A stretch of 64,000 nt of DNA, taken from positions 124,001 through 188,000 of IMG/VR virus record IMGVR_UViG_3300027996_002186; one strand, given 5' to 3'. Shown here in pieces: positions 4,144 to 60,880 of the stretch; the stretch's first letter is position 1, and every line of letters begins with the position of its first letter. The notes under the pieces are model-generated. The model did no database searches, was not told the DNA's origin, and saw nothing but the letters and a program-made list of their open reading frames with translations. The translations under genes were made by a program, and so were the position numbers.

Positions 4144-4477
4144 TGTATTTTACATATTACCTATTTTATTCATTTTTATGAATGTTTATCATATGCTTAA
4201 GAATAAGCAATTAGATAAGAGATTTAGAGAAAGAGATATAATTGGTATGTCAAGATTGGATATTATATATTATTTTACTAAAATTTCATATTGGATATGG
4301 GTACCAATTGGTTTCTTTACTAATCAACCAGAACTATTCTATGTATTATTTGTTTTGGGATTTTTGAAATTTCCCACTTACCATTTTAATAAAAATATTT
4401 TCAGGATCTATAATGATATATACCCAATTTTTTCTATATCCACACTAATTACAATTTTTTTTCATTGGTTGTTTTGA
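4136..4477 (+). CDS. Hypothetical membrane protein (about 4 TM)
   Basis: Several hydrophobic segments. Confidence 0.65.
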   Translation: MINVFYILPILFIFMNVYHMLKNKQLDKRFRERDIIGMSRLDIIYYFTKISYWIWVPIGFFTNQPELFYVLFVLGFLKFPTYHFNKNIFRIYNDIYPIFSISTLITIFFHWLF

Positions 4478-5310
4478 AATTCGTACCATTTTTCAATATT
4501 AATAGATTCTGATACATCAAAGTTTTTAAAATTCTTAATTCTTGGTAATCTACCTTTCCATTTTTTATTTAAAAATAATAGTTTGTTTTTATCAATTTTA
4601 CAATTTTTATTCGAAATACTACCCTCATTAAAAAGGTTTATCATTTCATCCATACTTAATGTTTTATGTTTTTTGTCAAAATTTGGATCCGGATGCGACC
4701 ATCCAAATTTTACTAACCAATTTAATAAAACTTCTTTACTATATTCTTTGTAATCCTCTGTTGTTCCATTACCAGTTCTTTTCGATAGTTTTTTATTACC
4801 TTCGAATAAAAGACCAGCATGTGTTATTTCTGGAAATTGTTTATCAGACTCAACCTCACAAATTTTATTCCATATTATTCTTTGTTTTATTTCATTAGAA
4901 ATATGATCTACACCTCTTACTATATTTGTTACGTCATAATCATAATCATCTAATATAGAAGAGAAGTTATAGGTTGGGAATCCATTATTTCTAAGTATAA
5001 CCATTTCATAACCACCCATATCTAACACATAACCCTTTTCAGTTTTCGTTCCGATTTTCTCAGCAACTTCTTTATATCTGTCTAATCTTTCTGATTGTCT
5101 AAATGTTATATCACTATCCAAACCAAATTTATTCATTTGATCATAGATATAATCTATCCATTCTGGTTTATTTCTTTCTTGATCGGTGTCATCAATACGT
5201 AGTATGAAAGTACCATTGTTAGCTTTAGCCATTAAATAGTTTAGCAATGCTGTTCTTAAAGTTCCTAAGTGGAATTGTCCTGTTGGTGACGGAGCTACTC
5301 TTGTTATCAT
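4462..5310 (-). CDS. Minimal glutamyl-tRNA synthetase-like protein (gltX-like catalytic core, shortened CP insertion, no anticodon-binding domain)
   Basis: RVAPSPTG, HLGT (HIGH), LRIDDTD, PTYNF, RGVDH, KLSKR (KMSKS), stem-contact GWS...KLLFLN; only 282 aa. Confidence 0.85.
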   Translation of the reverse strand: MITRVAPSPTGQFHLGTLRTALLNYLMAKANNGTFILRIDDTDQERNKPEWIDYIYDQMNKFGLDSDITFRQSERLDRYKEVAEKIGTKTEKGYVLDMGGYEMVILRNNGFPTYNFSSILDDYDYDVTNIVRGVDHISNEIKQRIIWNKICEVESDKQFPEITHAGLLFEGNKKLSKRTGNGTTEDYKEYSKEVLLNWLVKFGWSHPDPNFDKKHKTLSMDEMINLFNEGSISNKNCKIDKNKLLFLNKKWKGRLPRIKNFKNFDVSESINIEKWYEFQNNQ

Positions 5311-7079: not shown

Positions 7080-8777
7080 ATGCCATCATATAATAACTTT
7101 AACGGAGCAGCAGGAGCAGATTCTAACTTCGCTGCTAGTAATTCAGCAGTTGAGAATAAAGGACTATTTAGTCGTATTCTAAGAAACCTTTCAAATTATG
7201 GTATGAACTATGATGATATGATCATCAGAAATCAAGTTGGTATCGGTATAAATGAGGATCCATATTCAGCTAGAGGTAATTCGATGTATGATTTCTTTAG
7301 TCAGAGAGCTGTGGCTTCTGTTTTGAATAGAAAGTCAATACCTTATCTAGATAAAGCATATGGTGATAAGAGAAGAATACTTAGAGAGTATTCTATTAAG
7401 GATGAAATAAGAGATTTTGTGAGTACTATATCGGATGAGTCTATTGTTTTTAATGATGATGTTGCCTTTTGCTCACCTAAATCACTATCAAATGAATATC
7501 CACAAGAAGTAAGAGATAAGTATCAAGAATATTTCGAAAAAATATACAATAAGTATGGATTTTCTGATGGTATTAGTGCTTGGGATATGATGAGAGATTT
7601 CCTTATTGATGGTTATATAGCTATTGAGATTATATATGATGATAAGAAAAAGAATATTGTTGGTTTCAATAGAATGAGACCAGAAACTTTAGTACCTGCT
7701 TATGAACCAGCTATTGGACACTTATGGATACAATTTCCAGAGGATCCACAATTAAGGAGAATATTTTTAGATTCACAAATAGTTTATATATCATATTCAA
7801 CACAGAATGATTATTCAGAAACTTCTTATGTTGAAGGTTTGATAAAACCATATAATCAATTAAAAATATTAGAACAAACTAGAATAATGTTCAATGTTAT
7901 AAACGCTACTCTTTATCAAAAATTTACAATTCCTATTAAAGGATTGTCTAGACAAAGAGCAGAAGAACAAATAGGTCAGTTAATACATGATTATTCAGAA
8001 GAAGTTGAGTGGGATGATAGTCTAGGAACACTTACTATCAATGGTGCTAAGCACTTACCTTACAATAAACAAATATGGTTTCCTGAGGGAGATGCTGGTA
8101 CTCCTAATATGGAGATGGTTTCACCAGAAGGTCATGATTTGAATGATGAAACTATGTTATCTTGGTTTTATAAGTCTCTTAAAAGAGCTTCTAAGATACC
8201 TATATCTAGATTCGAAGGTGAAAATGGTGGTGGTAACCTTTTTGGTGACGCTTCTGAGATGACTAGAGATGAGATTAAATTTCACAATTTTATTAGTAGA
8301 TTAAGAGCTAACTTTAAAGAACTTATTGTTAAGCCACTTAAATTACAAATGTTAATTGAGTTTCCTGAATTAACAGAGGATGAGGTATTTACTAATAGAG
8401 TTGATATTGACTTCTATACTAATCAAATATTTGAAGATTGGAAGAAGATAAATAACTTAGCTAAGAAATCAGAAATAGTTGGAACTTTATTAGGTGTTAT
8501 GAGAACAGATGAAAAACCTTATTTTCACATTGAGTGGATAATGGATAATATATTCAAGCTTACTCCAGAGGAGAAAGCTGAGAATGACAGGTATTGGGCT
8601 CGTGATGCTGGTGAAGGTGTTGGTTCTGGTGAAGAAGGCGCTGAAGGCGGAGATGATGGAGGCGACTTTGGTGAATCTGGTGATGTTGGTGGTGTAGATG
8701 ATGCTGGTGGTGGAGATGATGGTGGAGATGCTGGTGGAGATGCTGGTGGAGATGACGGTGGAGAATTTGAATTCTAA
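7080..8777 (+). CDS. gp20: Portal vertex protein (T4 gp20-like)
   Basis: FLIDG.IAIE, LIKPYNQLKILE, WFPEG, KSLKRASKIPISRF, TRDEIKFHNFI.RLR.NF; Gly/Asp-rich tail. Confidence 0.92.
   Translation: MPSYNNFNGAAGADSNFAASNSAVENKGLFSRILRNLSNYGMNYDDMIIRNQVGIGINEDPYSARGNSMYDFFSQRAVASVLNRKSIPYLDKAYGDKRRILREYSIKDEIRDFVSTISDESIVFNDDVAFCSPKSLSNEYPQEVRDKYQEYFEKIYNKYGFSDGISAWDMMRDFLIDGYIAIEIIYDDKKKNIVGFNRMRPETLVPAYEPAIGHLWIQFPEDPQLRRIFLDSQIVYISYSTQNDYSETSYVEGLIKPYNQLKILEQTRIMFNVINATLYQKFTIPIKGLSRQRAEEQIGQLIHDYSEEVEWDDSLGTLTINGAKHLPYNKQIWFPEGDAGTPNMEMVSPEGHDLNDETMLSWFYKSLKRASKIPISRFEGENGGGNLFGDASEMTRDEIKFHNFISRLRANFKELIVKPLKLQMLIEFPELTEDEVFTNRVDIDFYTNQIFEDWKKINNLAKKSEIVGTLLGVMRTDEKPYFHIEWIMDNIFKLTPEEKAENDRYWARDAGEGVGSGEEGAEGGDDGGDFGESGDVGGVDDAGGGDDGGDAGGDAGGDDGGEFEF
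8610..8774 (+). repeat. Low-complexity coding repeat (GGDA/GGDD units) at the portal C-terminus
   Basis: ggtggagatgct-type 12-mers. Confidence 0.8.
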
Positions 8778-8826: not shown

Positions 8827-9280
8827 ATGCCGCAGTTTTTGGGTCGGGTATATCAAAGTAAAATTGTGTTACGCTATTACAACTTGGAAGTTTCATTTGT
8901 TTAACTTCTAGTAAACACCCCGATTCTAATATGTTTTTTAATTCTTTACCTTTTGGTGTATCTAGAACTTTTAATACTATTTTTAACTCATCCACTTTAT
9001 TATTCGTTATGATAAAAGACATTGACCTAACAAAAAATGATATACTTTTTAATAATATATCAGAATATTCTGGTTTTCCTAAACTACCATATACCGGACT
9101 ATTTATTTTTGATATTTCGGTTACGTCAAATCCAATCCTTTTACCTTCGTTTAATAAAACATTAAGTTTTATCTCACGTTTATATTGTATCCATTGTGGA
9201 AATTTAGTTAGTAATCGATCATAGTTATTTAACTCAACATCATTTCCTAAAACAACATTATATTCTAGTAAATCATCCAT
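8825..9280 (-). CDS. Catalytically dead paralog of the gp21-type prohead protease
   Basis: VYGSLGKPE vs own protease VYGEFDHPD; KVLDTPKGKELKNILESGC vs KLLSTYWGKEAKALVDDGC; the VSSR motif is absent. Confidence 0.55.
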   Translation of the reverse strand: MDDLLEYNVVLGNDVELNNYDRLLTKFPQWIQYKREIKLNVLLNEGKRIGFDVTEISKINSPVYGSLGKPEYSDILLKSISFFVRSMSFIITNNKVDELKIVLKVLDTPKGKELKNILESGCLLEVKQMKLPSCNSVTQFYFDIPDPKTAA

Positions 9281-11184
9281 TACATTTTTATGAAATCTAT
9301 TTGTTTCTTTTCTAAATCAACACCATTAACTATGATAGTTATCTCATCACCTAATCTGATTCTATCCCCAACATCATTAAAGATTTGATAGTTTTGTGTG
9401 TCTATATTATAATTACCTTCTAAAGATTGGTATCTTATCATACCCTCACATTTACTTTCTGTTAATTCAACATATAATCCCCAATCAGTTACACCAGAAA
9501 CTATCCCAGTGAATACTTTCCCAATTTTATCTAAAAGATATTCGGCTTGTTTGTATTTTATAGAATCTCTTTGGGCTCTGGATGCTATCAATTCTCTACT
9601 TGAACACCATTTAGCCTCATCTTCAACTTTAGTAGGGTTTCCTTGTTTCTTATTATGTAAGAAATCAAGTAACATTCTATGTGTCATTAAATCCGGATAC
9701 CTACGTATTGGACTTGTGAAGTGTGAATAGTGTGTGAATCCTAATCCATAATGTCCTATGTTTTGTATTGTGTATGTTGCTTTAGACATACATCTAGTTA
9801 CAACCGTACTTAACATATTTTCTTCTGGTGTTCCTTTAACATCTTGTAATAACTTGTTTATAGATTTTTTAAGATCTTCAGATTCGCCTTCTATTTTGAA
9901 TTCGTGACCAAAAGTCTTACACACATTTGATAATGCTGTTAACTTCTCCATATTAGGAGTATCATGTACTCTAAATACATTAGTTCTCGAATTACTTGAT
10001 AATAGTTTAGCAACAGATTTATTAGCTAGTAACATAAATTCTTCAATTAATTTATTAGCTTCTTTCTGTTCTTTGAAATAAACACCAATTGGTTTCTTAT
10101 TATCCTCTGCTAATTCGAATCGAACTTCCACACCACCCATCTCTAATGAACCGTCTTTAATTCTTTTCTTTCTTATTTTCTTAGCTAATGTGTTTAGATG
10201 ATTAATCATCAATGGATAAACACTACCATCACCTGTGTATTTTTCATCATTACCCTCGATTATCTCTTGAGCATCCTCATAAGCAAATCTCATATCAGAA
10301 TGTATGACTGTTTTACCGTGCCATTCTTTAACAATTTTACCATCCGAGTCTAGTGTAAATACAACTGAAAATGCTAACCTATCTTCATTAGGTTTTAATG
10401 AACATATTCCATTACTAAGTCTTTCTGGTAACATAGATACACATCTATCAACTAGATACACAGATGTTGCTCTTTCATAAGCTTCATCATCTAATTTAGT
10501 ACCAGGTTTAACATAGTGTCCAACATCAGCAATATGTACTCCTACTTCAAATCTATTATCATTCATTACTTTAAGTGATAATGCGTCATCAAAATCACGA
10601 GCATCTACTGGGTCGATTGTTATTGTTGTTGTATCTCTCATATCTCTACGAGATTTTATTTCCTTTTCGGTTATTACTTCTGGTGTGAGTTCTGATTCGT
10701 TTATAACATCTTGTGGAAAATCAACTGGTAATCCATATTCATACATTATCGAATTCATCTCAGCGTTATTATCACCAACATCTCCTAATATCTTAGTTAT
10801 CTTAGCTTGTGGGGATTTACTATCTACCCACTTTGTGAGTTCGACTATAACCTTTTGGTTATCTTCCGATTTTAATCCACCCTTGATATAGAAATCAACT
10901 GGTATTCTTTTATTATCTGCTATAACAAATGTTGATTTACCATTAATATGTACCTTACCAACGAATTCTTTCTTATTCCTTGATATTGTGTTAATTACTT
11001 TAGCTTCTAATTTCCTATCACCCCTAAATACTTCTACAATTACTTTATCTAAGTGTAAAGCATTTTTAGTATTCTTCTTATAAATGAAAATTGATTTATC
11101 GTTTATTGTGATTGTTGCGTGTCTGTTTGTTGAGAACTCTATTTGACCTTCGTAACGTTCTCCTTCTTTTATATTATTATTCAT
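9280..11184 (-). CDS. rnr: Ribonuclease R (RNB family, S1 C-terminus; N-terminal HTH absent)
   Basis: TIDPVDARDFDDALS, ATSVYLVDR..MLPE.LSN..CSL, LIEEFMLLAN, HFTSPIRRYPD. Frame is open to 11244; likely start MNNNIK at 11184. Confidence 0.95.
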   Translation of the reverse strand: MNNNIKEGERYEGQIEFSTNRHATITINDKSIFIYKKNTKNALHLDKVIVEVFRGDRKLEAKVINTISRNKKEFVGKVHINGKSTFVIADNKRIPVDFYIKGGLKSEDNQKVIVELTKWVDSKSPQAKITKILGDVGDNNAEMNSIMYEYGLPVDFPQDVINESELTPEVITEKEIKSRRDMRDTTTITIDPVDARDFDDALSLKVMNDNRFEVGVHIADVGHYVKPGTKLDDEAYERATSVYLVDRCVSMLPERLSNGICSLKPNEDRLAFSVVFTLDSDGKIVKEWHGKTVIHSDMRFAYEDAQEIIEGNDEKYTGDGSVYPLMINHLNTLAKKIRKKRIKDGSLEMGGVEVRFELAEDNKKPIGVYFKEQKEANKLIEEFMLLANKSVAKLLSSNSRTNVFRVHDTPNMEKLTALSNVCKTFGHEFKIEGESEDLKKSINKLLQDVKGTPEENMLSTVVTRCMSKATYTIQNIGHYGLGFTHYSHFTSPIRRYPDLMTHRMLLDFLHNKKQGNPTKVEDEAKWCSSRELIASRAQRDSIKYKQAEYLLDKIGKVFTGIVSGVTDWGLYVELTESKCEGMIRYQSLEGNYNIDTQNYQIFNDVGDRIRLGDEITIIVNGVDLEKKQIDFIKM

Positions 11185-11194
11185 ATTCCTTTTA

Positions 11195-11596
11195 TTAGGA
11201 AATATCGTTTTGTTTATTATCGCGTTTGGATATGTTGTCAACACCGTACTTATCTATAAGTGTTTTTTTCATTTTTTTCAATATTTTATTGTTTTGTATT
11301 GGATAGTCAACACCGTAATTTTCTCTTAATGATTTTTTCCTTTTTGATTCTGAGCATTTTCTACAAGAGTATTCACCCCAGTTATTATCATATTTAATAT
11401 AGTTCTTGAATATTACATCCTTTTCGATTCCACATTTATCACACTTACACTTTATTTTATAGTGGGATCCTTTGGATAGTAATTCAACTGGTATTATTAA
11501 TAATTCACCAATTGTAACATCACTATATCCTAGATTTTCATAGTATGAATAGTTTGCTTCGCTTATTTTAACTTTTATCTCTCTAGTTATTATCAT
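11195..11596 (-). CDS. Zn-binding protein with YGVD repeats typical of phage homing-endonuclease N-termini, no nuclease domain
   Basis: CKCDKC, CRKC, ENYGVDYP, DKYGVDNIS. Confidence 0.5.
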   Translation of the reverse strand: MIITREIKVKISEANYSYYENLGYSDVTIGELLIIPVELLSKGSHYKIKCKCDKCGIEKDVIFKNYIKYDNNWGEYSCRKCSESKRKKSLRENYGVDYPIQNNKILKKMKKTLIDKYGVDNISKRDNKQNDIS

Positions 11597-11686: not shown

Positions 11687-11739
11687 TCTGTAAAGAATCC
11701 ACCTTTGTTATTTTTAGAATTTACATTGTCAATATATAC
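11687..11739 (+). promoter_or_regulatory. Strong late promoter with upstream box TCTGTAAAGAATCCACCTT and TATATAC core
   Basis: The 19-nt box is identical to 13910-13928; AATCCA lies 37 nt upstream of TATATAC. Confidence 0.7.
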
Positions 11740-13909: not shown

Positions 13910-13962
13910 TCTGTAAAGAATCCACCTTGGTAAAAATCAAGAATTTGTGGGTTTATATATAC
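13910..13962 (+). promoter_or_regulatory. Strong late promoter of the MCP with upstream box
   Basis: TCTGTAAAGAATCCACCTT; AATCCA 13919 to TATATAC 13956 = 37 nt. Confidence 0.7.
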
Positions 13963-13992: not shown

Positions 13993-15723
13993 ATGTCACA
14001 CATTAGAATAGACAAACAAAAAGCTATGAAGAAATGGTCTCCAGTATTAGAGAACATGGGAGTTGCTGGTGAAGATAGATTGGATTGGATGTCAGAATAT
14101 GCTGAATTTCACTCAATCAATGAAAACGCTTACGCAAACGCTTCAAACGTATCGGGTATGGGAGCTGTAGTAGCTGCACAACCTAATTCATTAGCTGGTA
14201 ACACAATTGGCAATTACGCTGACTCAACTGGTTCAGGTGATGTTGGTCAAAACCTTTTACCGGTAGCGATGAAAATAGCAGCTCAAACAATCGGTTTAGA
14301 TTTAGTAGCTGTTAAACCTTCTCCAGGTCCAAAAATTGATTTATTATATATCGACTTTAGATATGATGATGCTCATTTAGGAGATTCAGACGAAAGACCA
14401 CAAGTCTTTAAGATTGCACCAAACGCTACATTTTTAACTACTGGTGCTGGTGGTATGACAGCAGTTATCGCTGGATTAAGAGCTCAATTAGCTACGAATA
14501 CAATCACTGAAACAGTTGGTGGTTTAACTGGTAGAATGTGGAATGATATCACAGATGGTTCAGATGTAGTTGTAGAACCAACACCTTCAAAAGAAGGAAA
14601 AGTTGAATTTTTAGGATTCTCTAGAATTGATGGTTATCCAATGTTCAGAGCTTACAGACAGATGAATACATCTCACACAGATGTTGGTTCAGCTCAAGCA
14701 AACTGGGGATTTGACCCGACTAGAAACACATTTAGTCCTACAATGTCAATGGCTTCTCAAATTACTGATTTAGGAGATGTTACTTTAACTGATGAGCCTA
14801 CTATTGAATTAGTATCAGCTCTTGAAGATCACATTCCTGGTTTCTCTGCAAACTGGATGTCGGATGCTACTGGCCCTGCTGGTAACTATCCAATGGATAG
14901 AGAAATGGACGATAAAAGATACTCTGGTATCATCGGACCAAAAATTAGTTCTAAAACAGTTGCCGTAGGTACTATTGAAGTATCTTCAGCTCTTAGAAGA
15001 ACTGAAATTGAAGATATCAAAGCTAACACTGGTATGGATATCGTTCAAAAAATGGAGTCAATTCTTGTTAATGAATTATCTCAAACAATCTCTAAGCAAA
15101 TTGTTGCTAAGATATTTGAAATGGGTTCACTTAACAGATTATCTGCACCAGCTTATGTTGGAACAGCACCGGCACCATTAGCGGGACAAACAATCTTTGA
15201 CTTAAACACAGCTTATGCAACTGTTGCTGCTGGTAATGGAAACGTTGGTGGTGAAACTACACACGCTGTTCAAAGAAAGCTTGTAACTAAGATAGCTCAC
15301 GCTTCTAACTACATCGCTACAGAGGGACGTGTTGGTCCAGCTCAATACCTTATTACAAATGGGGGATTAGCAGCAGCACTTTCTGATATCTCTGGTTATA
15401 CAATTAACCCAGTGAAATCAAAAATCAATGGTCAAGGTCAATTATACCCAGTAGGTTCAATTGGAGATATTTCAATATATGTTGATCCATATATGAGATA
15501 TAACGACAATAGAATTGCTCTTGGTAGAAAGAACAATCCAGATCAACCAGGTATTATTTTTGTACCTTACTTAATGGCTCAGTCTATATCTGTAATTTCT
15601 GAAGCGACTTTCGCTCCTAGAATGTTACTAAGATCTAGATACGCTGTAACAGAAGTTGGTTGGTTCCCACAAAAACAATTTATGACTATCGAAGTTACAG
15701 ATGTGAATACACTTCTTAACTAA
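13993..15723 (+). CDS. gp23: Major capsid protein (T4 gp23-like)
   Basis: KKWSPVLE, IAAQTIGLDLVAVKP, ILVNELSQTISKQIV, IYVDPY, FVPY, TFAPRMLLRSRYA; follows protease/scaffold. Confidence 0.92.
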   Translation: MSHIRIDKQKAMKKWSPVLENMGVAGEDRLDWMSEYAEFHSINENAYANASNVSGMGAVVAAQPNSLAGNTIGNYADSTGSGDVGQNLLPVAMKIAAQTIGLDLVAVKPSPGPKIDLLYIDFRYDDAHLGDSDERPQVFKIAPNATFLTTGAGGMTAVIAGLRAQLATNTITETVGGLTGRMWNDITDGSDVVVEPTPSKEGKVEFLGFSRIDGYPMFRAYRQMNTSHTDVGSAQANWGFDPTRNTFSPTMSMASQITDLGDVTLTDEPTIELVSALEDHIPGFSANWMSDATGPAGNYPMDREMDDKRYSGIIGPKISSKTVAVGTIEVSSALRRTEIEDIKANTGMDIVQKMESILVNELSQTISKQIVAKIFEMGSLNRLSAPAYVGTAPAPLAGQTIFDLNTAYATVAAGNGNVGGETTHAVQRKLVTKIAHASNYIATEGRVGPAQYLITNGGLAAALSDISGYTINPVKSKINGQGQLYPVGSIGDISIYVDPYMRYNDNRIALGRKNNPDQPGIIFVPYLMAQSISVISEATFAPRMLLRSRYAVTEVGWFPQKQFMTIEVTDVNTLLN

Positions 15724-18076: not shown

Positions 18077-18077
18077 C

Positions 18078-18129
18078 TATAAACAATCCATTTTAACAAC
18101 TTTTAAATATTTTAGTATATTATATATAC
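18078..18129 (+). promoter_or_regulatory. tmRNA promoter with upstream AAACAATCCA box and TATATAC core
   Basis: tataaacaatcca is identical to 58921-58933; AATCCA lies 38 nt upstream of TATATAC. Confidence 0.6.
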
Positions 18130-18146
18130 ATTAATTACAAACACTT

Positions 18147-18526
18147 GGGGGTGTCATAGAATAGATTCGCAGAGTAAAGGTAGTTATGCAGGTATCGGAT
18201 TGTTAAATACCCGATTAATAAATTAAATAACAAAACAGTAAACGGAAACGTAACAGAAGTAGCAAGCAAAGAAGATTTAGTATTTGCTCTACAAAACAAC
18301 CTACTTAACGTAGGGGAGTTAGTTGAAGCTTAATAGAGGAAACTCTTGAAAATTTAACAACTGATTTACACAGTTAAAAAGGTAAGACCGTTATTTGATA
18401 ATTTTTAGAAGTCTTTTCAAAAAAATTATCTAGTTTGAAAGTTTAGAAAAACTTTCTAAGCCTGTAAATGAATAATTATTGTTAACTGAGGAAGACACGA
18501 TGGGCAGTACATCGTCATCTCCACAA
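18147..18526 (+). ncRNA. ssrA: tmRNA (one-piece); tag ORF 18244-18333 GNVTEVASKEDLVFALQNNLLNVGELVEA*
   Basis: 5' GGGGGTG pairs with CATCTCC-A (G3:U wobble); T-arm cgatg-GGCAGTA-catcg; about 380 nt; internal ORF after GTAAAC ending TAA TAG. Confidence 0.9.
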
Positions 18527-18529
18527 GAG

Positions 18530-18591
18530 CCGATTGAATACTTTCAATTGGATTTTTTAACCTCACTTCCTACATGGGAGTGAGGTTTTTT
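18530..18591 (+). terminator. Two tandem hairpins/terminators after tmRNA
   Basis: ccgattgaa/ttcaattgg and aacctcacttcc/gggagtgaggtt, each followed by a T-run. Confidence 0.8.
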
Positions 18592-18624
18592 AATGCTATA
18601 GAACTATGACGTATTGTTTTTGAT

Positions 18625-44709: not shown

Positions 44710-45186
44710 GTGGTTAATAATCTAAGAAATATAATTATTGGTGATACCAATGTAGGAAAATCTACTTATTTGTATCAAATAGCAAACACATTAAATAAAT
44801 GTGGGTATTCGGTATGCCTTATTGATGGTGATGGGTCTGGTATATCAAACCCTATTGATAATGATGTTATAAACCTTGTGAATAAGAATGATGTTAGGTT
44901 ATTTAAGATGGTAAATAATATTGATGATATTGATGTTATTTTAATTGATGATATTGGATATTTATCTTCTGAGTGTATATCTGAGGTTTCTGATAGTAAA
45001 AAGGTTATTATATCAATTTGTTTCAAGGACTGGGGATCCAAACTGAATAAGTTTGTTGAAAAAAGTGAAATATTTAAATTGACTAAGACAACAATTGAGT
45101 ATAATAATTCTATTATAGATAGAAATGGATATTTATTACAATCAATAAGAGAAACAAAACTAAAATACTTATTAAATGAAAAATAG
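44710..45186 (+). CDS. Miniature P-loop NTPase (RecA/DnaB-like fragment) with C-terminal RETKLKYLL motif
   Basis: IIIGDTNVGKS Walker A, VILIDD Walker B; 158 aa. Confidence 0.65.
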   Translation: MVNNLRNIIIGDTNVGKSTYLYQIANTLNKCGYSVCLIDGDGSGISNPIDNDVINLVNKNDVRLFKMVNNIDDIDVILIDDIGYLSSECISEVSDSKKVIISICFKDWGSKLNKFVEKSEIFKLTKTTIEYNNSIIDRNGYLLQSIRETKLKYLLNEK

Positions 45187-46234
45187 TGTGGATAAACAGT
45201 ATATAGATTTTCTAAAATATATACTTGAAAATGGTGAATTAAAAGAAGATAGAACCGGAACCGGAACCATTTCAATATTTGATTATTCAATGACATTTGA
45301 TATGTCAGAGGGTTTTCCGTTATTAACTTCTAAGAAAGTTTTTACAAAAGCTGTAATACACGAGCTAATATGGTTTTTGAGAGGTGATACAAATATAAAA
45401 TATCTTGTCGATAATGGTGTTAATATTTGGAATGGTGATGCCTTTAAGAATTATATGAAGAATTCTAGTGAATTTAAGGGTGATTGGCCAGATACTATGA
45501 TTGATTTTATTGATAGGGTTAAATCTGATGGTGAATTTGCTAAGAAATGGGGAGATTTAGGCCCTGTTTATGGTAAACAATGGAGAAACTGGAAAGGTTA
45601 TAAGAAAGTTGTTAATGGTTGGGAACATAATTCTCCTTCTAGTTGGAAGGACGTTCCTCAGGTAGACCAAATAGCCGATTTAATAAGAGACCTTAAAAAT
45701 AATCCAGATTCTAGAAGGCTTATGGTCAGTGCTTGGAATCCTGGAGAGCTTGATAAGATGGTTTTACCACCTTGTCATTATGGGTTTCAGTGTTATACTA
45801 ATAAAATGACACACGATGAAAGAAGGGAATGGTGGTGTTCGTCAATAAATAAGTCTTTAATATATTCACAGGATATGACTGATGATATGTTAGATGATAG
45901 AGAAGTACCTAGAAAAAAATTGAGTCTTAAATGGAATCAAAGATCAGTGGATTCATTTTTAGGATTACCATTTAATATAGCATCATATGGTATATTATTA
46001 CACCTTTTAGCTAGAGAGGTTAATATGGTTCCAAATCAATTAAAGTTTTCTGGTGGTGATTGTCATATATATACTAACCATGTTGATCAAGTAAAACAAC
46101 AATTAACAAGAGAAACATTTGGTTTGTGTAAAATAGAATTAAATAACATTTCGATAGATAATTTATATTTTGATAATATCAAGATTATTAATTATGAATC
46201 ATCTGGTGTTATAAAAGCACCTTTATCAAACTAA
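45176..46234 (+). CDS. thyA: Thymidylate synthase
   Basis: DRTGTGT, FPLLTSKK, ELIWFLRG, LGPVYGKQWR, RRLMVSAWNP, LPPCH, QRSVD.FLGLPFN, HIY.NH. Confidence 0.97.
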   Translation: MKNSVDKQYIDFLKYILENGELKEDRTGTGTISIFDYSMTFDMSEGFPLLTSKKVFTKAVIHELIWFLRGDTNIKYLVDNGVNIWNGDAFKNYMKNSSEFKGDWPDTMIDFIDRVKSDGEFAKKWGDLGPVYGKQWRNWKGYKKVVNGWEHNSPSSWKDVPQVDQIADLIRDLKNNPDSRRLMVSAWNPGELDKMVLPPCHYGFQCYTNKMTHDERREWWCSSINKSLIYSQDMTDDMLDDREVPRKKLSLKWNQRSVDSFLGLPFNIASYGILLHLLAREVNMVPNQLKFSGGDCHIYTNHVDQVKQQLTRETFGLCKIELNNISIDNLYFDNIKIINYESSGVIKAPLSN

Positions 46235-56325: not shown

Positions 56326-58869
56326 ATGATAAAAGTAATAAAAAGAAATGGGAAGAAAGAGCCGGTAATGTTAGATAAGATTGTTGATAGAATAACTCAA
56401 CAAACTTACAAACTAGACCAGAAGTGGGTAATTCCTTTTGACGTAGCTCAAAAAGTAATTGCTGGAGTGGCTCCTAATATTAAAACTTCCGTACTTGATA
56501 GATTAGCTATGGAAACTGCAGCGTCTTTGGCGACTAAACATCCAGATTATTCTATACTAGCAGCTAGGTTGGCTATAACAACCTTACACAAAGAAACTAA
56601 GAAGAGTTTTTCGGAGACAGTTTCAGACTTATATAATTATATTGATCCAAGAACAAATAGATTATCTCCTATTGTTTCTGATTCTTTTCAGAATATTGTA
56701 AATGAGCATAAGGGTAGATTAGATTCTGCTATTGTTCACTCTCGTGATCATAATTTTGATTATTTTGGATTTAAGACACTTGAGAAATCATATCTATTGA
56801 AATTAAATGGTGTTGTAGCTGAAAGACCTCAGTATATGTATATGAGAACAGCAATACAAATTTGGGGTAATAATATTGATAAGGTTATTGAAACATATAA
56901 CTACCTATCAGAAGGATATTATACACACGCTACACCAACATTATTTAATTCCGGTACAGGTAGACCACAATTATCTTCTTGTTTTCTATTAGATACCGAA
57001 GATGATTCAATTGAGGGAATATTTAATACTCTTAAAGAATCAGCTCAAATATCAAAGAACGCCGGAGGTATTGGTATATCTTTTAATAAAGTAAGAGGTA
57101 AAGGAACATATATCGCTGGTACTAATGGTACTTCAAATGGTATTATTCCATTCTTGAAGATTTTTAATGAGACTGCAAGAGCTGTTGATCAAGGTGGGGG
57201 AAAACGTAAAGGTTCTATTGCTATTTATATGGAACCTTGGCACTCTGATATTATGGAGTTCTTAGACCTTCGTAAGAATCAAGGTAAAGATGAGATTAGA
57301 GCTAGAGATTTATTCTTGGCTATGTGGATGAATGACTTATTTATGGAAAGAGTTGATTTAGATGAGGATTGGTCTTTGATGTGTCCACATGAATGTACTG
57401 GTTTGAATGAAACTTATGGTGAAGAATTCCGTGAATTGTATTTGAAATATGAAAAGGAAGGAAGATATAAGAAAGTTATTAAGGCTAGAGAAGTTTGGAA
57501 TAAAATACTTGAATCGCAAATAGAAACTGGTACACCATATATCTTATATAAAGATGCTATTAATGAGAAATCAAATCAATCAAATATTGGTATTGTTAGA
57601 TCTTCTAACTTATGTGCTGAGATTGTTGAAGCTACTGGTATTACTAAGATTCAAAAGGAAGTATTGAAGAATAAAGAATTACTTGAGAGTTTAGATTTGG
57701 GTGAGTTTTATGGTAGAGAATATGTTAATGAAACTGCTGTATGTAACTTAGCGTCTATTGCTCTTCCAAAGTTTGTGAATAAGAATAAAACTTATAACCA
57801 TAAGAAGTTATATGATGTGGCTTACAATGCTACTATTAACCTTAATAATGTTATTGATGTTAATTTTTATCCATCAGAGGGTGCTAAATTTTCTAACCTA
57901 TTACATAGACCAATTGGTTTGGGTGTTCAGGGATTGGCTGATGTTTTCTTTATGACAAACTTAGCATATGATTCAGATGAGGCTAAAGAATTAAACAGAG
58001 AGATATTTGAAACGATTCACTTCGCGGCAATGAAAGCTTCTTGTGACTTAGCTAAAGAACAAGGACCATACGCTACTTATAAAGGTTCTCCGATATCAGA
58101 GGGTAAATTTCAATTTGATTTGTGGGGTGTTGTTCCGACAAAGAGATGGGATTGGGATAAACTAAGATCTGAGATTTTAGAATTTGGTGTGAGAAACTCA
58201 TTAACTGGTTGTATAATGCCAACAGCATCAACGGCTAATATATTGGGTAACGAAGCATCTTGTGAGGGTCAAACTTCAAATATGTACACTAGAAGTGTTC
58301 TTTCTGGAACTTTCATTATGGTTAATAAATATTTAGTTAAAGAATTGGTTAAATTAGGAATTTGGGATGATTCGTTAAGAAGAAAGATAATTTCTGAGAA
58401 TGGTTCAGTTCAAAACATACCAGAAGTACCAACGAATATTAAAGAAATATTTAAAACTGTTTATGAGATTAAACAAAAAGATGTAATTGATATGGCGGCT
58501 GATAGAGGAGCCTTTATTGACCAAACACAATCAATGAATATCTTTATGGATTCTCCGAATTTTGCTAAATTAACAGCAATGCACTTCTACGGTTGGGGAA
58601 GAAGAAACTTTATGTTAGATGATAAAGGACAACCAATCTTACCAAAAGGTGAAGGTATCGAAATCGTTTATGATGAAGATGGGAAACCAAGATTCTTTAG
58701 AGATAAGAAGTACTCACTTAAAACTGGTATTTATTATTTGAGAAATAAATCAGCAACGGATGCTGTTAAATTCACTGTTCAAGAAGATAAGAAATCTATT
58801 GAGGAGCAAATGGATGAAATAGCTTGTTCGCTTGATAATCCAGATGATTGTTTGTCTTGTGGAGCATAA
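56326..58869 (+). CDS. nrdA: Ribonucleotide reductase class Ia alpha subunit with ATP cone
   Basis: VIKRNG, THATPTLFN.G, QLSSCF, SSNLCAEI, TAVCNLAS, IMPTAST, LKTGIYYLR, C-terminal CLSC. Confidence 0.96.
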   Translation: MIKVIKRNGKKEPVMLDKIVDRITQQTYKLDQKWVIPFDVAQKVIAGVAPNIKTSVLDRLAMETAASLATKHPDYSILAARLAITTLHKETKKSFSETVSDLYNYIDPRTNRLSPIVSDSFQNIVNEHKGRLDSAIVHSRDHNFDYFGFKTLEKSYLLKLNGVVAERPQYMYMRTAIQIWGNNIDKVIETYNYLSEGYYTHATPTLFNSGTGRPQLSSCFLLDTEDDSIEGIFNTLKESAQISKNAGGIGISFNKVRGKGTYIAGTNGTSNGIIPFLKIFNETARAVDQGGGKRKGSIAIYMEPWHSDIMEFLDLRKNQGKDEIRARDLFLAMWMNDLFMERVDLDEDWSLMCPHECTGLNETYGEEFRELYLKYEKEGRYKKVIKAREVWNKILESQIETGTPYILYKDAINEKSNQSNIGIVRSSNLCAEIVEATGITKIQKEVLKNKELLESLDLGEFYGREYVNETAVCNLASIALPKFVNKNKTYNHKKLYDVAYNATINLNNVIDVNFYPSEGAKFSNLLHRPIGLGVQGLADVFFMTNLAYDSDEAKELNREIFETIHFAAMKASCDLAKEQGPYATYKGSPISEGKFQFDLWGVVPTKRWDWDKLRSEILEFGVRNSLTGCIMPTASTANILGNEASCEGQTSNMYTRSVLSGTFIMVNKYLVKELVKLGIWDDSLRRKIISENGSVQNIPEVPTNIKEIFKTVYEIKQKDVIDMAADRGAFIDQTQSMNIFMDSPNFAKLTAMHFYGWGRRNFMLDDKGQPILPKGEGIEIVYDEDGKPRFFRDKKYSLKTGIYYLRNKSATDAVKFTVQEDKKSIEEQMDEIACSLDNPDDCLSCGA

Positions 58870-58880
58870 CATATATAATT

Positions 58881-58918
58881 AAAAAAAAGGAGAAGATTTT
58901 TAACTTCTCCCTTTTTTT
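58881..58918 (+). terminator. Intrinsic terminator after nrdA
   Basis: ggagaag/cttctcc stem flanked by A and T runs. Confidence 0.8.
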
Positions 58919-58920
58919 GC

Positions 58921-58971
58921 TATAAACAATCCACCTTCGAAAAAAATGAAATTTTAGAGGTTGATATATAC
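58921..58971 (+). promoter_or_regulatory. Promoter for the Y-RNA-like locus with AAACAATCCACCTT box and TATATAC core
   Basis: AATCCA 58928 to TATATAC 58965 = 37 nt. Confidence 0.65.
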
Positions 58972-58997
58972 ATATAGAAATTAGAAACGAATAAAAA

Positions 58998-59069
58998 ACC
59001 AGTAGTGATTTAAAGAGTTACTTCGAAATATAAATTCTAAAAACACACTCTTTGATAACTTCCTCTGGT
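58998..59069 (+). ncRNA. Y-RNA-like RNA 1 (short, 72 nt)
   Basis: Terminal stem accag/ctggt; TAGTGA; inner stem aaagagt/actcttt followed by TACTTCGA; upstream of Ro60. Confidence 0.7.
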
Positions 59070-59084
59070 CTATTATTATAATAA

Positions 59085-59298
59085 GCAAACATAGCGATAG
59101 TTTGAGATACTTCGAGATCTAAATGATCAACTATGAAAAAAAGTGATTAGCGACAGCGAATCTACCAAAACACTATAAAGTAGTTGAGGTGAAAAAGTCC
59201 GAGTGACTACGTAAAGGTCAAAGTGAGATGGTCACTTAAACTATCGGCGAATATTCTCACGAATCTTCGTAGCGCTTCGGCTAAATTTTCTTGTTTGC
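59085..59298 (+). ncRNA. Y-RNA-like RNA 2 (long, 214 nt)
   Basis: Terminal stem gcaaaca/tgtttgc; TAGCGA; 12-bp stem cgatagtttgag/cttaaactatcg followed by ATACTTCGA; multi-hairpin insert. Confidence 0.7.
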
Positions 59299-59309
59299 AA
59301 ATATTATAT

Positions 59310-59355
59310 AAAAGACCAGATTAACTACAAATGTAGAGAGTCTGGTCTTTTTTTT
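59310..59355 (+). terminator. Terminator-like hairpin between the Y-like RNAs and Ro60
   Basis: aaaagaccaga/tctggtctttt plus inner ctac/gtag and a long T-run. Confidence 0.8.
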
Positions 59356-59384
59356 GAATTAAAAATTAAATAAAAATAAAAATT

Positions 59385-60836
59385 ATGTCAAAATTTAACA
59401 CAACAATGCCAAAGGCAATAACAAAGACTTCCAATTTAGCTGGTGGGGAATCTTATTCACAATCTAATGAGTTAGTGTTGGTTTCGCTATTATTAACATC
59501 ATTTGTTAATACTCAATTTTATAGAGATGGTGGTAATTCTTTAGTAGATTTGAAAAATATTTCTGAGAAGGTTAAGGATAAAGAGTTTGTTGCGAAAGCT
59601 GCTATATTTGCTCGTGACCGTTTCGGGATGAGAAGTATTACTCACGCTTTAGCTGGTGAATTGACTTCACAACTTACTGGTCAAGAGTGGGCTAAGGATT
59701 TCTACGAGAAAGTGGTTGTTCGTGTTGATGATATGACAGAAATATTATCTTACTACTTAGAAAACAAAACATCTAAAGATAATCCAAAGTTTCCAAATGC
59801 TTTGAAGAAGGGATTTGCGAAGGCTTTTGATAAATTTGATGGATATAATCTATCTAAGTATAAAGGTGAGAATAAGGAAGTGAAGTTAGTTGATATTGTG
59901 AACTTAGTTCACCCTGTTCCGACTTCTAGAAATAAAGAAGCGCTTGAGTCACTTATCAGAGGTGAGTTGAAAAACACACAAACTTGGGAAGCTAAGTTAT
60001 CTGAAGCTGGTCAAAAGGCTGATTCTAAGGAAGATTTGGAAAAATTAAAATCAGATGCTTGGGGAGAGTTAATCTCAACTGGTAAGATTGGATATTTCGC
60101 TCTTTTGAGAAACTTGAGAAATATTATAACTCAATCACCTACTTCTATTAAGGAAGCTTGTGAGATGTTAGTTAATGAAAAGTTAATCAAGAAGTCAAGA
60201 ATTCTTCCATTCCGTTTCGCTACGGCTTATGAGGAAATCAATAAGATTGGTTCTTCTAAGGATGTCAGAGATGTACTTATTGCTCTTAATCAAGCACTTG
60301 ATATATCAGTAGCTAACGTTCCTAAGTTCGAAGGAGAAACACTTGTAGTTATGGACGTTTCAGCTTCTATGAGGGGTATAGCATCTGACACGGCTTCTTT
60401 ATTCGGTGCAATTCTATCAAAGGTTAATAACTGTGATGTTATGACATTTGCTAGAGAAGCTAACTATATGGCATATAATCCAATGGATTCTGTGTTAACT
60501 ATTAGAGATGGTTTTAGATTTGCTGGTGGTGGAACAAACTTTAAGTCAATTTTCACAACTGCTAACAAGAAGTATGATAGAATAATAATTCTTTCAGATA
60601 TGCAAGGATGGGTTGGTTATACTACACCATCTGATGAATTTAACCAATATAAGAATATGTTTGGTGCTACACCATTCGTTTATTCTTGGGATCTCGCTGG
60701 GTATGGTACATTGCAGTTCCCAGAAAATAATGTCTTTGCTTTAGCCGGATTTTCCGATAAAGTATTCGATATTATGAAGTTGATGGAGGTCGACAAAAAG
60801 GCTCTCTTCAATGAGATAAAGTCTATCCAGCTTTAA
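59385..60836 (+). CDS. rsr: Ro60/Rsr TROVE-vWA ribonucleoprotein
   Basis: NLAGGESY, ARDRFGMRS, RVDDMTEIL, IGYFALLRNLRNI, ILPFRF, MIDAS DVSASM, GGTNF, LSDMQ. Confidence 0.93.
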   Translation: MSKFNTTMPKAITKTSNLAGGESYSQSNELVLVSLLLTSFVNTQFYRDGGNSLVDLKNISEKVKDKEFVAKAAIFARDRFGMRSITHALAGELTSQLTGQEWAKDFYEKVVVRVDDMTEILSYYLENKTSKDNPKFPNALKKGFAKAFDKFDGYNLSKYKGENKEVKLVDIVNLVHPVPTSRNKEALESLIRGELKNTQTWEAKLSEAGQKADSKEDLEKLKSDAWGELISTGKIGYFALLRNLRNIITQSPTSIKEACEMLVNEKLIKKSRILPFRFATAYEEINKIGSSKDVRDVLIALNQALDISVANVPKFEGETLVVMDVSASMRGIASDTASLFGAILSKVNNCDVMTFAREANYMAYNPMDSVLTIRDGFRFAGGGTNFKSIFTTANKKYDRIIILSDMQGWVGYTTPSDEFNQYKNMFGATPFVYSWDLAGYGTLQFPENNVFALAGFSDKVFDIMKLMEVDKKALFNEIKSIQL

Positions 60837-60839
60837 CAA

Positions 60840-60880
60840 AAACACACTTCTTTGAAGTGGGTTTTTTGTTTTAATATATA
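60840..60880 (+). terminator. Terminator hairpin (60840-60867) followed by late promoter TTAATATATA (60871-60880)
   Basis: cacttc/gaagtg stem plus T-run; exact decamer. Confidence 0.65.

What the first reader, a model, noticed from the sequence alone, without database searches (positions are those of the whole stretch)
58998..60836. Phage-encoded Ro60 with two tandem Y-RNA-like RNAs, one carrying a non-tRNA-like effector domain
Seen: two elements share one architecture: terminal stem, TAG(T/C)GA, inner stem ending GAG, (T/A)TACTTCGA, then a 3' AA(C/T)TT(C/T)CT before the closing stem. Element 1 is 72 nt with an A-rich loop. Element 2 is 214 nt with a roughly 130-nt multi-hairpin insert (gatc/gatc, aacta/tagtt, gtgac/gtcac) and a CUUCGG hairpin, with no recognisable T-loop. 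They share a promoter box with the capsid genes and tmRNA. Known: bacterial Ro60 (Rsr) is tethered by Y/Yrl RNAs to effectors such as PNPase; Yrl RNAs usually mimic tRNA and are known from a few phages. Inference: a phage RNP with a new effector module, possibly recruiting the phage RNase R or acting as an RNA decoy.
Basis: partly seen in the sequence, partly recalled or inferred. Interest (0 to 1): 0.8.

Follow-up and report, generated by a model that had tools for sequence, protein, structure and literature searches.

The report
Phage Ro60 with two Y-like RNAs
A huge uncultured phage encodes the RNA-binding ring protein Ro60 and, just upstream, two conserved structured RNAs of the Y-RNA kind, the larger of which carries a 160-nt folded domain that is not the usual tRNA mimic and matches no described RNA family.

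Summary
Window 59385-60836 encodes a Ro60/TROVE protein. Upstream on the same strand lie a 72-nt element (El1, 58998-59069) and a 214-nt element (El2, 59085-59298). Both have the same frame: terminal stem, URGYRA loop, inner stem, UUACUUCG, and a 3' ..UU.YCU loop.

More than 45 related phage contigs keep this pair, and the stems show many compensatory changes. The same frame occurs upstream of Ro60 in more distant phages and in Bacteroidota genomes. There it often encloses a tRNA-like domain that gives sub-threshold but significant Rfam YrlA hits. So the elements are best read as Y-RNA-like partners of Ro60.

In phages whose Ro60 is at least 65% identical to the window's, the tRNA-like domain is replaced by a multi-hairpin domain. 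Most relatives also have a pseudoknot there. This domain matches no Rfam family.

The CUUCGG "hairpin" is the 3' strand of the inner stem, and its C is peculiar to this window. The tmRNA is not confirmed. An RNase P P4-like look is not supported by covariation.

Nothing tests the partner of the new domain (phage RNase R, host PNPase or other), or Ro60 binding itself.

Verdict: a new variant of a known kind, of moderate interest.

The parts
58881..58918 (.). Two-way intrinsic terminator that closes the upstream ribonucleotide reductase gene (56326-58869)
   Evidence: Terminator scan found a 15-pair stem followed by a T run on both strands. RNR Pfam domains.
58920..58973 (+). Promoter-like bipartite box: CTATAAACAATCCA, then about 52 nt on, (G)ATATATAC
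   Evidence: The same box at the same spacing stands at 11688, 13911 and 18077. WATATATA[CA] lies 15-30 nt before many start codons in the window. The box is conserved upstream of El1 in relatives. Promoter function is inferred.
58998..59069 (+). El1, a short Y-like RNA. Stem 1 58998-59002/59065-59069; UAGUGA 59003-59008; stem 2 59009-59017/59048-59056; UUACUUCG 59018-59025; A-rich loop to 59047; 3' loop AACUUCCU 59057-59064
   Evidence: 29 homologs: 89.6% of cells paired against 30-54% for slid controls; 12 pairs with compensatory change; 0/500 shuffles reach this. 81 distinct modules from phages and Bacteroidota: 90.3% paired against 37-54% slid, and all 14 pairs of stems 1 and 2 show changes on both sides. 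Covariance model R1 scores 81 bits here and finds no other copy in the window.
59085..59298 (+). El2, a long Y-like RNA. S1 59085-59091/59292-59298; UAGCGA 59092-59097; S2 59098-59106/59275-59283; AUACUUCGA 59107-59115; inner domain 59116-59274; 3' loop AAUUUUCU 59284-59291
   Evidence: 31 distinct homologs of 214-292 nt. Forty pairs in eight helices are 96.9% paired against 31-49% slid, with 17 compensatory pairs against 9.2+-1.6 in shuffles. U.G pairs in S2 fix the + strand as the RNA strand.
59116..59274 (+). Inner (effector-position) domain of El2. Hairpins 59145-59162, 59163-59191 (UACC/GGUG closing a variable hairpin), 59221-59237 and 59247-59270. Conserved single-stranded GUGAAAAAGU at 59189-59198
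   Evidence: Helix coordinates from the constrained fold. Covariation per helix. Conservation map. No Rfam match here or in two homologs. Function unknown.
59310..59355 (+). Intrinsic terminator after El2 (core GACCAGA/UCUGGUC, then U8), 30 nt before the Ro60 start
   Evidence: -22 kcal/mol, z -6.4. A hairpin plus U run stands at this place in nearly all relatives.
59385..60836 (+). Ro60 (TROVE + vWA) gene, 483 aa
   Evidence: AlphaFold model: pLDDT 82.6, helical N-terminal part plus an alpha/beta C-terminal domain. No promoter motif of its own within 130 nt, so read-through of the El2 terminator is inferred. Its own terminator-like hairpin lies at about 60835-60870.
9280..11244 (-). Phage RNase R/II-family exoribonuclease, a candidate partner only
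   Evidence: RNB E 1e-110 with CSD and S1 domains. Conserved across the clade. Any link to the Ro60 RNP is inference from published Rsr work with RNase II.

Best explanation
El1 and El2 are two Y-RNA-like noncoding RNAs that partner the phage's own Ro60.

Transcription (inferred): they are transcribed together from a capsid-type (probably late) promoter box. Most transcripts end at the strong terminator after El2, and some read through to give Ro60 mRNA.

Fold and binding: each RNA pairs its 5' and 3' ends (stem 1), then forms a second stem (stem 2). Between and beyond these stems sit nearly invariant unpaired bases: U-R-G-Y-R-A; UUACUUC; AACA; and on the 3' side UU.U.UCU. These are the likely Ro60 contact surface. 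The URGYRA loop and the 3' ACUU-type loop sit where YrlA and animal Y RNAs carry GNCGAA/GGUCCGA and ACUUG.

El1 is the short form, with only an A-rich loop, and probably acts as a gate or regulator of the Ro60 ring.

El2 carries a 159-nt multi-hairpin domain in the position where relatives carry a tRNA mimic. By analogy with other Y RNAs, this domain tethers Ro60 to a second protein. The most plausible candidate is a 3'-5' exoribonuclease with S1/cold-shock domains, either the phage RNase R or host PNPase, so that structured RNAs are degraded or processed during late infection.

Shown: the Ro60 gene; the RNA structures and their covariation; linkage to Ro60 across phages and Bacteroidota; replacement of the tRNA-like domain in one clade.

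Inferred: transcription, Ro60 binding, tethering, and the identity of the partner.
For: 1. Ro60 identity.

2. Shared frame, beyond chance: (2 hits against 0.02 expected).

3. Conservation: the tandem pair El1+El2 stands upstream of Ro60 in every related locus with Ro60 at least 65% identical and enough upstream sequence. All 21 IMG/VR contigs found by the El2 5' DNA pattern alone come from this family; for the 9 not seen before, a Ro60 start lies downstream.

4. Structure: El1 and El2 both show strong covariation against slide and shuffle controls. The unpaired invariants are listed.

5. Link to the Y/Yrl family:
- In L048 (Ro60 50% identical), four tandem modules share the same frame. One encloses an ARAGORN/Rfam tRNA (50 bits). 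Two give YrlA hits of 31.9 and 24.9 bits.
- In 15 further phage loci, 12 YrlA hits of 33-45 bits, E 1e-6 to 2e-3.
- R1 finds 76 modules in 50 phage loci and 56 in 62 Bacteroidota loci, nearly all upstream of Ro60 on its strand.

6. Precedents:
- Two Yrl RNAs upstream of a phage Ro60 bind it in EMSA and form a ternary complex with host PNPase (PMC12135203).
- Bacteria have at least two Y RNAs each, one tRNA-like and one short (PMC4201824).
- Y RNAs are modular, with a Ro60-binding stem and an effector-binding module (10.1101/312249).
- Rsr works with RNase II.
Against: No transcript, RNA end, or binding data exist for this uncultured phage.

Neither element reaches any Rfam Y-RNA model, even at E<=10.

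The canonical GNCGAAN0-1G motif is only approximated (UAGCGAUAG in El2, UAGUGAUUU in El1).

In the window's own El2, the inner stem S2 has a U.C mismatch, and an alternative pairing of its 3' strand with AAGUCCGAG is 6.7 kcal/mol more stable in silico. The comparative fold lies 7.6 kcal/mol above the MFE.

El1 alone folds no better than shuffled sequence (z -1.58).

Co-occurrence with RNase R is uninformative.
Confidence: 0.68

Rival explanations
1. El2 with its terminator is mainly a cis-acting leader (attenuator) that sets Ro60 expression. For example, Ro60 binding to the nascent Y-like fold could decide whether the terminator forms, rather than El2 acting in trans as a tether.
For: A structured RNA followed by a strong terminator 30 nt before the start codon is the classic attenuator layout. 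Ro60 has no promoter motif of its own. The terminator stem (GACCAGA/UCUGGUC) has the same sequence as El1's terminal stem, so cross-pairing is possible. The two change together in L183/L186, L187 and the L210 group. The window's El2 has two competing folds.
Against: The co-change fails in L013/L037, L176 and L215. No conserved anti-terminator overlaps the 3' strand of S1. In 26 of 31 homologs the Y-like fold is the more stable one. The same frame occurs in arrays of up to six copies, and upstream of other genes before Ro60. That fits trans-acting RNAs processed from a precursor, as in M. smegmatis. The two roles do not exclude each other.
Confidence: 0.12
2. El2's inner domain is a decoy or sponge rather than a tether. 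It would soak up a host factor (a defence nuclease, an RNA chaperone, or an exoribonuclease), with Ro60 only protecting the RNA.
For: Phage-encoded structured RNAs with A-rich single-stranded linkers (GAAAAAAAGUG, GUGAAAAAGU) could bind S1/KH/cold-shock proteins. Ro60 stabilises Y RNAs in other systems. The domain is clade-specific, as counter-defence parts often are.
Against: No target is identifiable, and there is no similarity to any host RNA family in Rfam. The data here cannot tell this apart from the tether model.
Confidence: 0.12
3. El2's inner domain is a reduced member of a known RNA class: an RNase P-like catalytic core (AAAGUCCG...CGGCU resembles helix P4 with its bulged U), a hidden tRNA mimic, or a 5S-like fragment.
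For: In the window sequence, AAG(U)CCGAG can pair with CUUCGGCU exactly as a P4 helix with a bulged U would, and this is the thermodynamically preferred fold.
Against: No RNase P, tRNA, YrlA, tmRNA or 5S model scores at E<=10 in the window or in two homologs. The C that completes the P4-like helix is unique to the window; 30 of 31 homologs have A or another base there. The bulged register breaks in L013 and L054. Overall these pairings are 78-82% paired, against 98.9% for the Y-like inner stem that uses the same 3' strand. No T-loop motif is found in any locus of the clade.
Confidence: 0.03
4. The elements are not functional RNAs but DNA-level signals (protein-binding repeats, replication or packaging sites) or neutral leftovers.
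For: No expression data exist. The region is AT-rich, where hairpins arise easily. El1's fold energy is unremarkable.
Against: Compensatory changes keep the pairing, including many G.U pairs that would be A.C on the other strand. Strictly invariant unpaired motifs persist across phages and bacteria with 41-100% Ro60 identity. Orientation and position relative to Ro60 are fixed.
Confidence: 0.03

Closest known systems
YrlA / YrlB of Salmonella Typhimurium and Mycobacterium smegmatis (Rfam RF02553 for YrlA; Chen et al. 2014, PMC4201824)
   Same: Encoded next to Ro60 on the same strand, at least two per locus. The 5' and 3' ends pair; an internal loop carries a G.CGA-type motif on the 5' side and an ACUU-type motif on the 3' side; then comes a second stem and an inner module. 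One long and one short RNA. In relatives of this phage, the same frame encloses domains that score as YrlA.
   Different: The window's RNAs get no YrlA score at all. El2's inner module has no T-arm or D-arm and is about twice as long. El1's loop is A-rich and about 30 nt, not small and pyrimidine-rich. An extra invariant UUACUUC follows stem 2.
Yrl1 / Yrl2 and phiRo60 of Thermus phage phiLo (PMC12135203; PDB 9KOP, 9L5Y)
   Same: The best solved-structure match of the window's Ro60 (E 1.9e-22). Two Y-like RNAs in tandem directly upstream of a phage Ro60 gene. They were identified by a CGA(A) motif in an internal bulge, shown to bind the protein, and shown to form a complex with host PNPase.
   Different: Only about 25% protein identity. 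The phiLo RNAs are described as simple one- or two-hairpin RNAs; nothing like El2's multi-hairpin domain is reported.
Deinococcus radiodurans Yrn1 / Yrn2 and the Rsr-Y RNA-PNPase machine (RYPER)
   Same: The working model is borrowed from here. The stem binds the Ro60 ring and the second module binds S1/KH domains of an exoribonuclease. There is also a short second Y RNA. Rsr also works with RNase II.
   Different: Yrn1's module has a T-arm. No sequence similarity was detectable. The nuclease partner here is unknown.
Metazoan Y RNAs (Rfam RF00019)
   Same: [quoted passage not shown]
   Different: No model match. Different polymerase and 3'-end biology. Sizes lie outside the usual 80-130 nt.

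Membership tests
Ro60 / TROVE proteins | TROVE domain | tested here: met
   PF05731 E 2.4e-18, 67 bits against a cut-off of 23.
Ro60 / TROVE proteins | C-terminal vWA domain with MIDAS DxSxS | tested here: met
   Aligned over residues 13-478 to phiRo60. D324, S326, S328, T384 and D405 are invariant in 8 relatives.
Ro60 / TROVE proteins | Ring of HEAT-like helices closed by the vWA domain | tested here: inconclusive
   AlphaFold model with pLDDT 82.6 and pTM 0.79 shows a helical N-terminal part plus an alpha/beta C-terminal part.
Y RNAs (general definition) | Encoded within about 2-4 kb of a Ro60 gene, same strand | tested here: met
   El1 lies 316-387 nt and El2 87-300 nt upstream, + strand. 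Same arrangement in all relatives.
Y RNAs (general definition) | 5' and 3' ends pair to form the stem that holds the Ro60 site | tested here: met
   Stem 1 and stem 2 with compensatory changes.
Y RNAs (general definition) | Conserved Ro60-binding bases (GGUCCGA in animals; GNCGAAN0-1G in bacteria) near the 5' end | tested here: inconclusive
   At the matching position stands U-R-G(99%)-Y-R-A(100%). El2 reads AGCGAUAG and El1 reads AGUGAUUU. This resembles the motif but does not match it.
Y RNAs (general definition) | Length 80-130 nt | tested here: not met
   Predicted 72 nt (El1) and 214 nt (El2). RNA ends were not mapped.
Y RNAs (general definition) | Bound by Ro60 and stabilised by it | not testable with these tools
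   Needs EMSA or RIP.
YrlA (Rfam RF02553) | Covariance-model score at or above gathering (69 bits) | tested here: not met
   No hit even at E<=10 in 58850-59400. Relatives with the same frame score 25-45 bits.
YrlA (Rfam RF02553) | tRNA-like module with T-arm and D-arm | tested here: not met
   No tRNA or YrlA match and no ARAGORN gene. No GGTTCRANNC motif is found in any locus with Ro60 at least 65% identical.
Short second Y RNAs (YrlB, Yrn2) | [quoted passage not shown] | tested here: not met
   El1 is a long hairpin, but its loop is about 30 nt and A-rich.
RNase P RNA | Helix P4 with bulged U, supported across homologs, and a model match | tested here: not met
   No Rfam RNase P hit. The bulged register is 82% paired with a fixed G.A/A.A mismatch and breaks in L013 and L054. 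The same 3' strand pairs 98.9% in S2.
   ARAGORN finds none. RF00023 scores 8.8 bits, E 0.22, against a gathering score of 47.

The most novel reading that the evidence does not exclude
El2's inner domain is a new class of Y-RNA effector module. It would be a pseudoknotted, multi-hairpin RNA that replaced the tRNA mimic in one lineage of huge T4-like phages. It would couple the phage Ro60 ring to a partner other than PNPase, most attractively the phage's own RNase R-family enzyme, giving a wholly phage-encoded RNA-degradation machine active late in infection. A variant of this reading is that the competing pairings of the S2 3' strand make El2 a switch that Ro60 binding flips.
Probability: 0.2. 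Interest if true: 0.75.

Novelty: new variant of a known kind. Interest (0 to 1): 0.55.

Why it matters
Y RNAs are thought to decide what the Ro60 ring does by choosing its partner. In bacteria, almost all known examples use one solution, a tRNA mimic.

This locus gives a natural experiment. The same Ro60-binding frame is found with no module (El1), with tRNA-like modules (distant phages and Bacteroidota), and with an unrelated 160- to 240-nt structured module (this phage clade).

That makes two open questions directly testable with synthetic RNAs and one recombinant protein:
- Which bases does a bacterial-type Ro60 read? The near-invariant URGYRA, UUACUUC and AACA give sharp predictions.
- What does the second module recruit?

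It also adds a Bacteroidota/phage Y-RNA subfamily that current Rfam models miss.

Tried and rejected
1. Rfam on the whole window at gathering scores, and on the locus at E<=10: nothing relevant. The same held for the longest El2 homolog (L019) and a divergent one (L061).

2. RNase P-like reading of AAAGUCCG...CGGCU: rejected on covariation and because the key C is unique to the window.

3. A long-range helix CGAUAGUUU/AAACUAUCG: 81% paired, and substitutions are not compensated.

4. A bulged-helix model for the loop between stems 1 and 2 (G9-C71): the 3' base is A in most homologs. A 3-bp alternative (A8-U69, G9-Y68, Y10-R67) holds in the close set, but its third pair fails in 38 of 81 modules. 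It is left as an internal loop.

5. UACUU pairing with AAAGU, as RNAalifold proposed in one run: 43% paired.

6. Similarity of El1, El2 or the box to other parts of the window by short-word BLAST: only the promoter box recurs.

7. RNase R co-occurrence as a test of partnership: both genes belong to the clade's backbone, so the test has no power.

9. mafft Q-INS-i for structural alignment: not installed, so E-INS-i was used instead.

10. A search for a cultured phage carrying this system: none. All annotated phages except LR745206.1 have at most 31% Ro60 identity.
Full report
WHAT IS THERE

The window comes from a low-GC, T4-like huge phage. It has a Gp20-like portal at 7080-8777 and a Gp23-like capsid protein at 13993-15723. 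Contigs holding an identical copy of this locus reach 483-493 kb. The nearest deposited genome is the 634.8-kb uncultured phage LR745206.1, at 78% DNA identity over the locus.

ORF 59385-60836 is a Ro60 protein:
- Pfam TROVE, E 2.4e-18.
- Full-length match to the solved Ro60 of Thermus phage phiLo (E 1.9e-22), with weaker matches to Xenopus Ro60 and Deinococcus Rsr.
- An invariant MIDAS motif.
- A confident AlphaFold model, pLDDT 82.6. The fold-library check was not available.

The 515 bases between the ribonucleotide reductase gene and Ro60 hold no ORF of 40 aa or more.

THE TWO ELEMENTS

The joint motif TAGYGA-N9-WTACTTCGA is found twice in the window, only here, against 0.02 expected.

The pair is kept upstream of Ro60 in every related locus with enough sequence. 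I collected 31 distinct El2 sequences and about 30 distinct El1 sequences from IMG/VR and JGI contigs, and more with a protein-profile scan.

El1 structure. Stem 1, a short middle helix and stem 2 are 89.6% paired across 29 homologs, against 30-54% when the 3' partners are slid. Twelve pairs show changes on both sides, and 0 of 500 shuffles reach this.

El2 structure. Forty pairs in eight helices are 96.9% paired, against 31-49% slid, with 17 compensatory pairs against 9.2+-1.6 in shuffles. The helices are:
- the terminal stem S1;
- the inner stem S2;
- a UACC/GGUG-closed arm;
- the local hairpin AAGUGA/UCACUU;
- an extended 3' hairpin;
- in most relatives, an extra AAGGAA hairpin whose loop pairs with a downstream stretch, forming a pseudoknot.

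The window's El2 is the shortest known form and lacks that extra hairpin and pseudoknot. Many U.G pairs fix the + strand as the RNA strand.

WHY THEY ARE Y-RNA-LIKE

Neither element scores with any Rfam Y-RNA model, so the argument is comparative.

A covariance model of El1 (R1) finds one copy in the window. It also finds 76 copies in 50 other phage Ro60 loci and 56 in 62 Bacteroidota genome loci, almost all just upstream of Ro60 on its strand.

Over 81 distinct modules the stems vary freely: all 14 pairs of stems 1 and 2 show changes on both sides, and 90.3% of cells are paired against 37-54% slid. That alignment is fitted to the model, which favours it. The unpaired bases are nearly fixed: U-R-G(99%)-Y-R-A(100%), UUACUUC (96-100%), AACA, and 3' UU.U.UC(98%)U.

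In loci whose Ro60 is 46-60% identical to the window's, one to six such modules stand in tandem. Many enclose a T-loop about 25 nt after UUACUUCG. These give full-length YrlA matches of 25-45 bits (E down to 1e-6; gathering score 69). One in L048 encloses a complete tRNA-like gene.

The module's layout matches the YrlA consensus printed by cmscan: stem, then a 5' G.CGA-type loop opposite a 3' AACUU-type loop, then a second stem.

The published definition of bacterial Y RNAs fits. They are encoded next to Ro60; they have a terminal stem, a Ro60 motif and a second, effector-binding module; and there are at least two per species, one long and one short (PMC4201824; 10.1101/312249). The closest solved Ro60, from phage phiLo, has two Y-like RNAs in tandem upstream that bind it in vitro (PMC12135203).

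WHAT IS NEW

In all loci with Ro60 at least 65% identical to the window's, the second RNA has no T-loop. It carries instead the multi-hairpin domain. The domain's core motifs persist through large sequence change: an AGC..ACAGC hairpin loop, G.UGAAAAAGNCCG, the GAGAUG loop, AUCGG, and the 3' hairpin.

Nothing like it is found next to Ro60 in the Bacteroidota loci. It matches no Rfam family in three tested homologs.

Non-tRNA inserts as such are not unique. Neolewinella aurantiaca, an isolate whose Ro60 is 49% identical, has two 105-nt RNAs with the same frame and small UUCG-type hairpins inside.

CUUCGG is not a hairpin. It is the 3' strand of S2, and its C is found only in the window's sequence.

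That same C creates an RNase P P4-like helix with AAG(U)CCGAG, and it makes an alternative fold 6.7 kcal/mol more stable than the Y-like fold in this one sequence. In 26 of 31 homologs the Y-like fold wins, and the P4-like pairings are only 78-82% kept. I therefore reject an RNase P relationship.

The 'tmRNA' behind the same promoter box is not confirmed.

EXPRESSION (INFERRED)

A bipartite box, CTRTAAASAATCCA followed about 52 nt later by ATATATAC, precedes El1, the major capsid gene, ORF 11766 and the noncoding stretch at 18130. The second half of the box is a general motif 15-30 nt before many genes.

El2 is followed by a strong terminator. Ro60 starts 30 nt later with no motif of its own. 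The RNAs are therefore probably made in excess, with Ro60 expressed by read-through, much as YrlA, YrlB and Rsr share a precursor in M. smegmatis.

MECHANISM

The best-supported reading is a phage Ro60 ribonucleoprotein. The invariant loops and stems 1 and 2 bind Ro60. El1 acts as a gate or regulator. El2's domain binds a second protein.

The partner is open. The phage RNase R (9280-11244) has S1 and cold-shock domains of the kind that PNPase uses on Yrn1, and Rsr is known to work with RNase II. But both genes are simply clade backbone.

Rival readings are an attenuator of Ro60 expression, a decoy, a known RNA in disguise, and a non-RNA signal. Each is weighed in its own section.

VERDICT

The Y-RNA interpretation is supported by comparative evidence but not by any binding or expression data. 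The effector idea is untested. This is a new variant of a known kind.

Noticed in passing
window 18077-18600: A noncoding stretch of about 450 nt sits behind the same promoter box and ends in a terminator. ARAGORN finds nothing, and Rfam tmRNA scores only 8.8 bits (E 0.22) over the full model length.
   Followed up: partly
window, many sites (e.g. 7045, 11731, 13954, 16193, 23220, 35857, 56290, 60873): WATATATA[CA] lies 15-30 nt upstream of many start codons on both strands. It is probably the phage's general -10-like promoter element. Only four sites add the upstream CTRTAAASAATCCA half.
   Followed up: partly
window 59314-59347 versus 58998-59069: The terminator stem after El2 (GACCAGA/UCUGGUC) has the same sequence as El1's terminal stem. 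The two change together in L183/L186, L187 and the L210 group, but not in L013/L037, L176 or L215. Possible cross-pairing, or common origin; unresolved.
   Followed up: partly
L005, L008, L001, L013 and most El2 homologs (absent from the window): An extra hairpin (AAGGAA...UUCCUU) whose loop pairs with the stretch just before the next hairpin. All three pairs scored covary strongly (for example UAUC/GAUA, CAGCU/AGCUG, GUUUU/AAAAC), so this is a pseudoknot.
   Followed up: yes
L048:780-1425: Four tandem Y-like modules upstream of Ro60: one short, one enclosing a complete tRNA-like gene (ARAGORN tRNA-Pro agg; Rfam tRNA 50 bits) whose acceptor stem begins inside UUACUUCG, and two YrlA-like.
   Followed up: partly
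L313:1153-1258 and 1311-1415 (Neolewinella aurantiaca SSH13): A cultured Bacteroidota isolate has two 105-nt RNAs with the same frame upstream of its Ro60, with small UUCG-type hairpins inside and no T-loop. It offers a tractable native system for this Y-RNA subfamily.
   Followed up: partly
L295:118-184, 229-759, 1501-: In a Saprospiraceae bin, an El1-like RNA is followed by a Tpt1/KptA RNA 2'-phosphotransferase gene (PF01885, E 1.6e-50) and then Ro60, which is an RNA-repair context.
   Followed up: partly
L215:1501-3633 (also L216): The Ro60 gene is split into 156-aa and 324-aa parts by an inserted 224-aa ORF with weak HNH/NUMOD3 homing-endonuclease matches. This is probably an intron or a free-standing endonuclease insertion.
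   Followed up: partly
window 2668-3750, 4462-5310, 45176-46234: Host-like metabolic and translation genes: a glutamine synthetase-like gene, a Glu/Gln-tRNA synthetase catalytic-domain protein of only 282 aa, and thymidylate synthase.
   Followed up: no
window 58929-58968: Inside the promoter box, AUCCACCU and AGGUUGAU form an inverted repeat. It is also present in the capsid-gene box at 13911 but not at 11688 or 18077. It may be a regulator site or a 5' hairpin.
   Followed up: no
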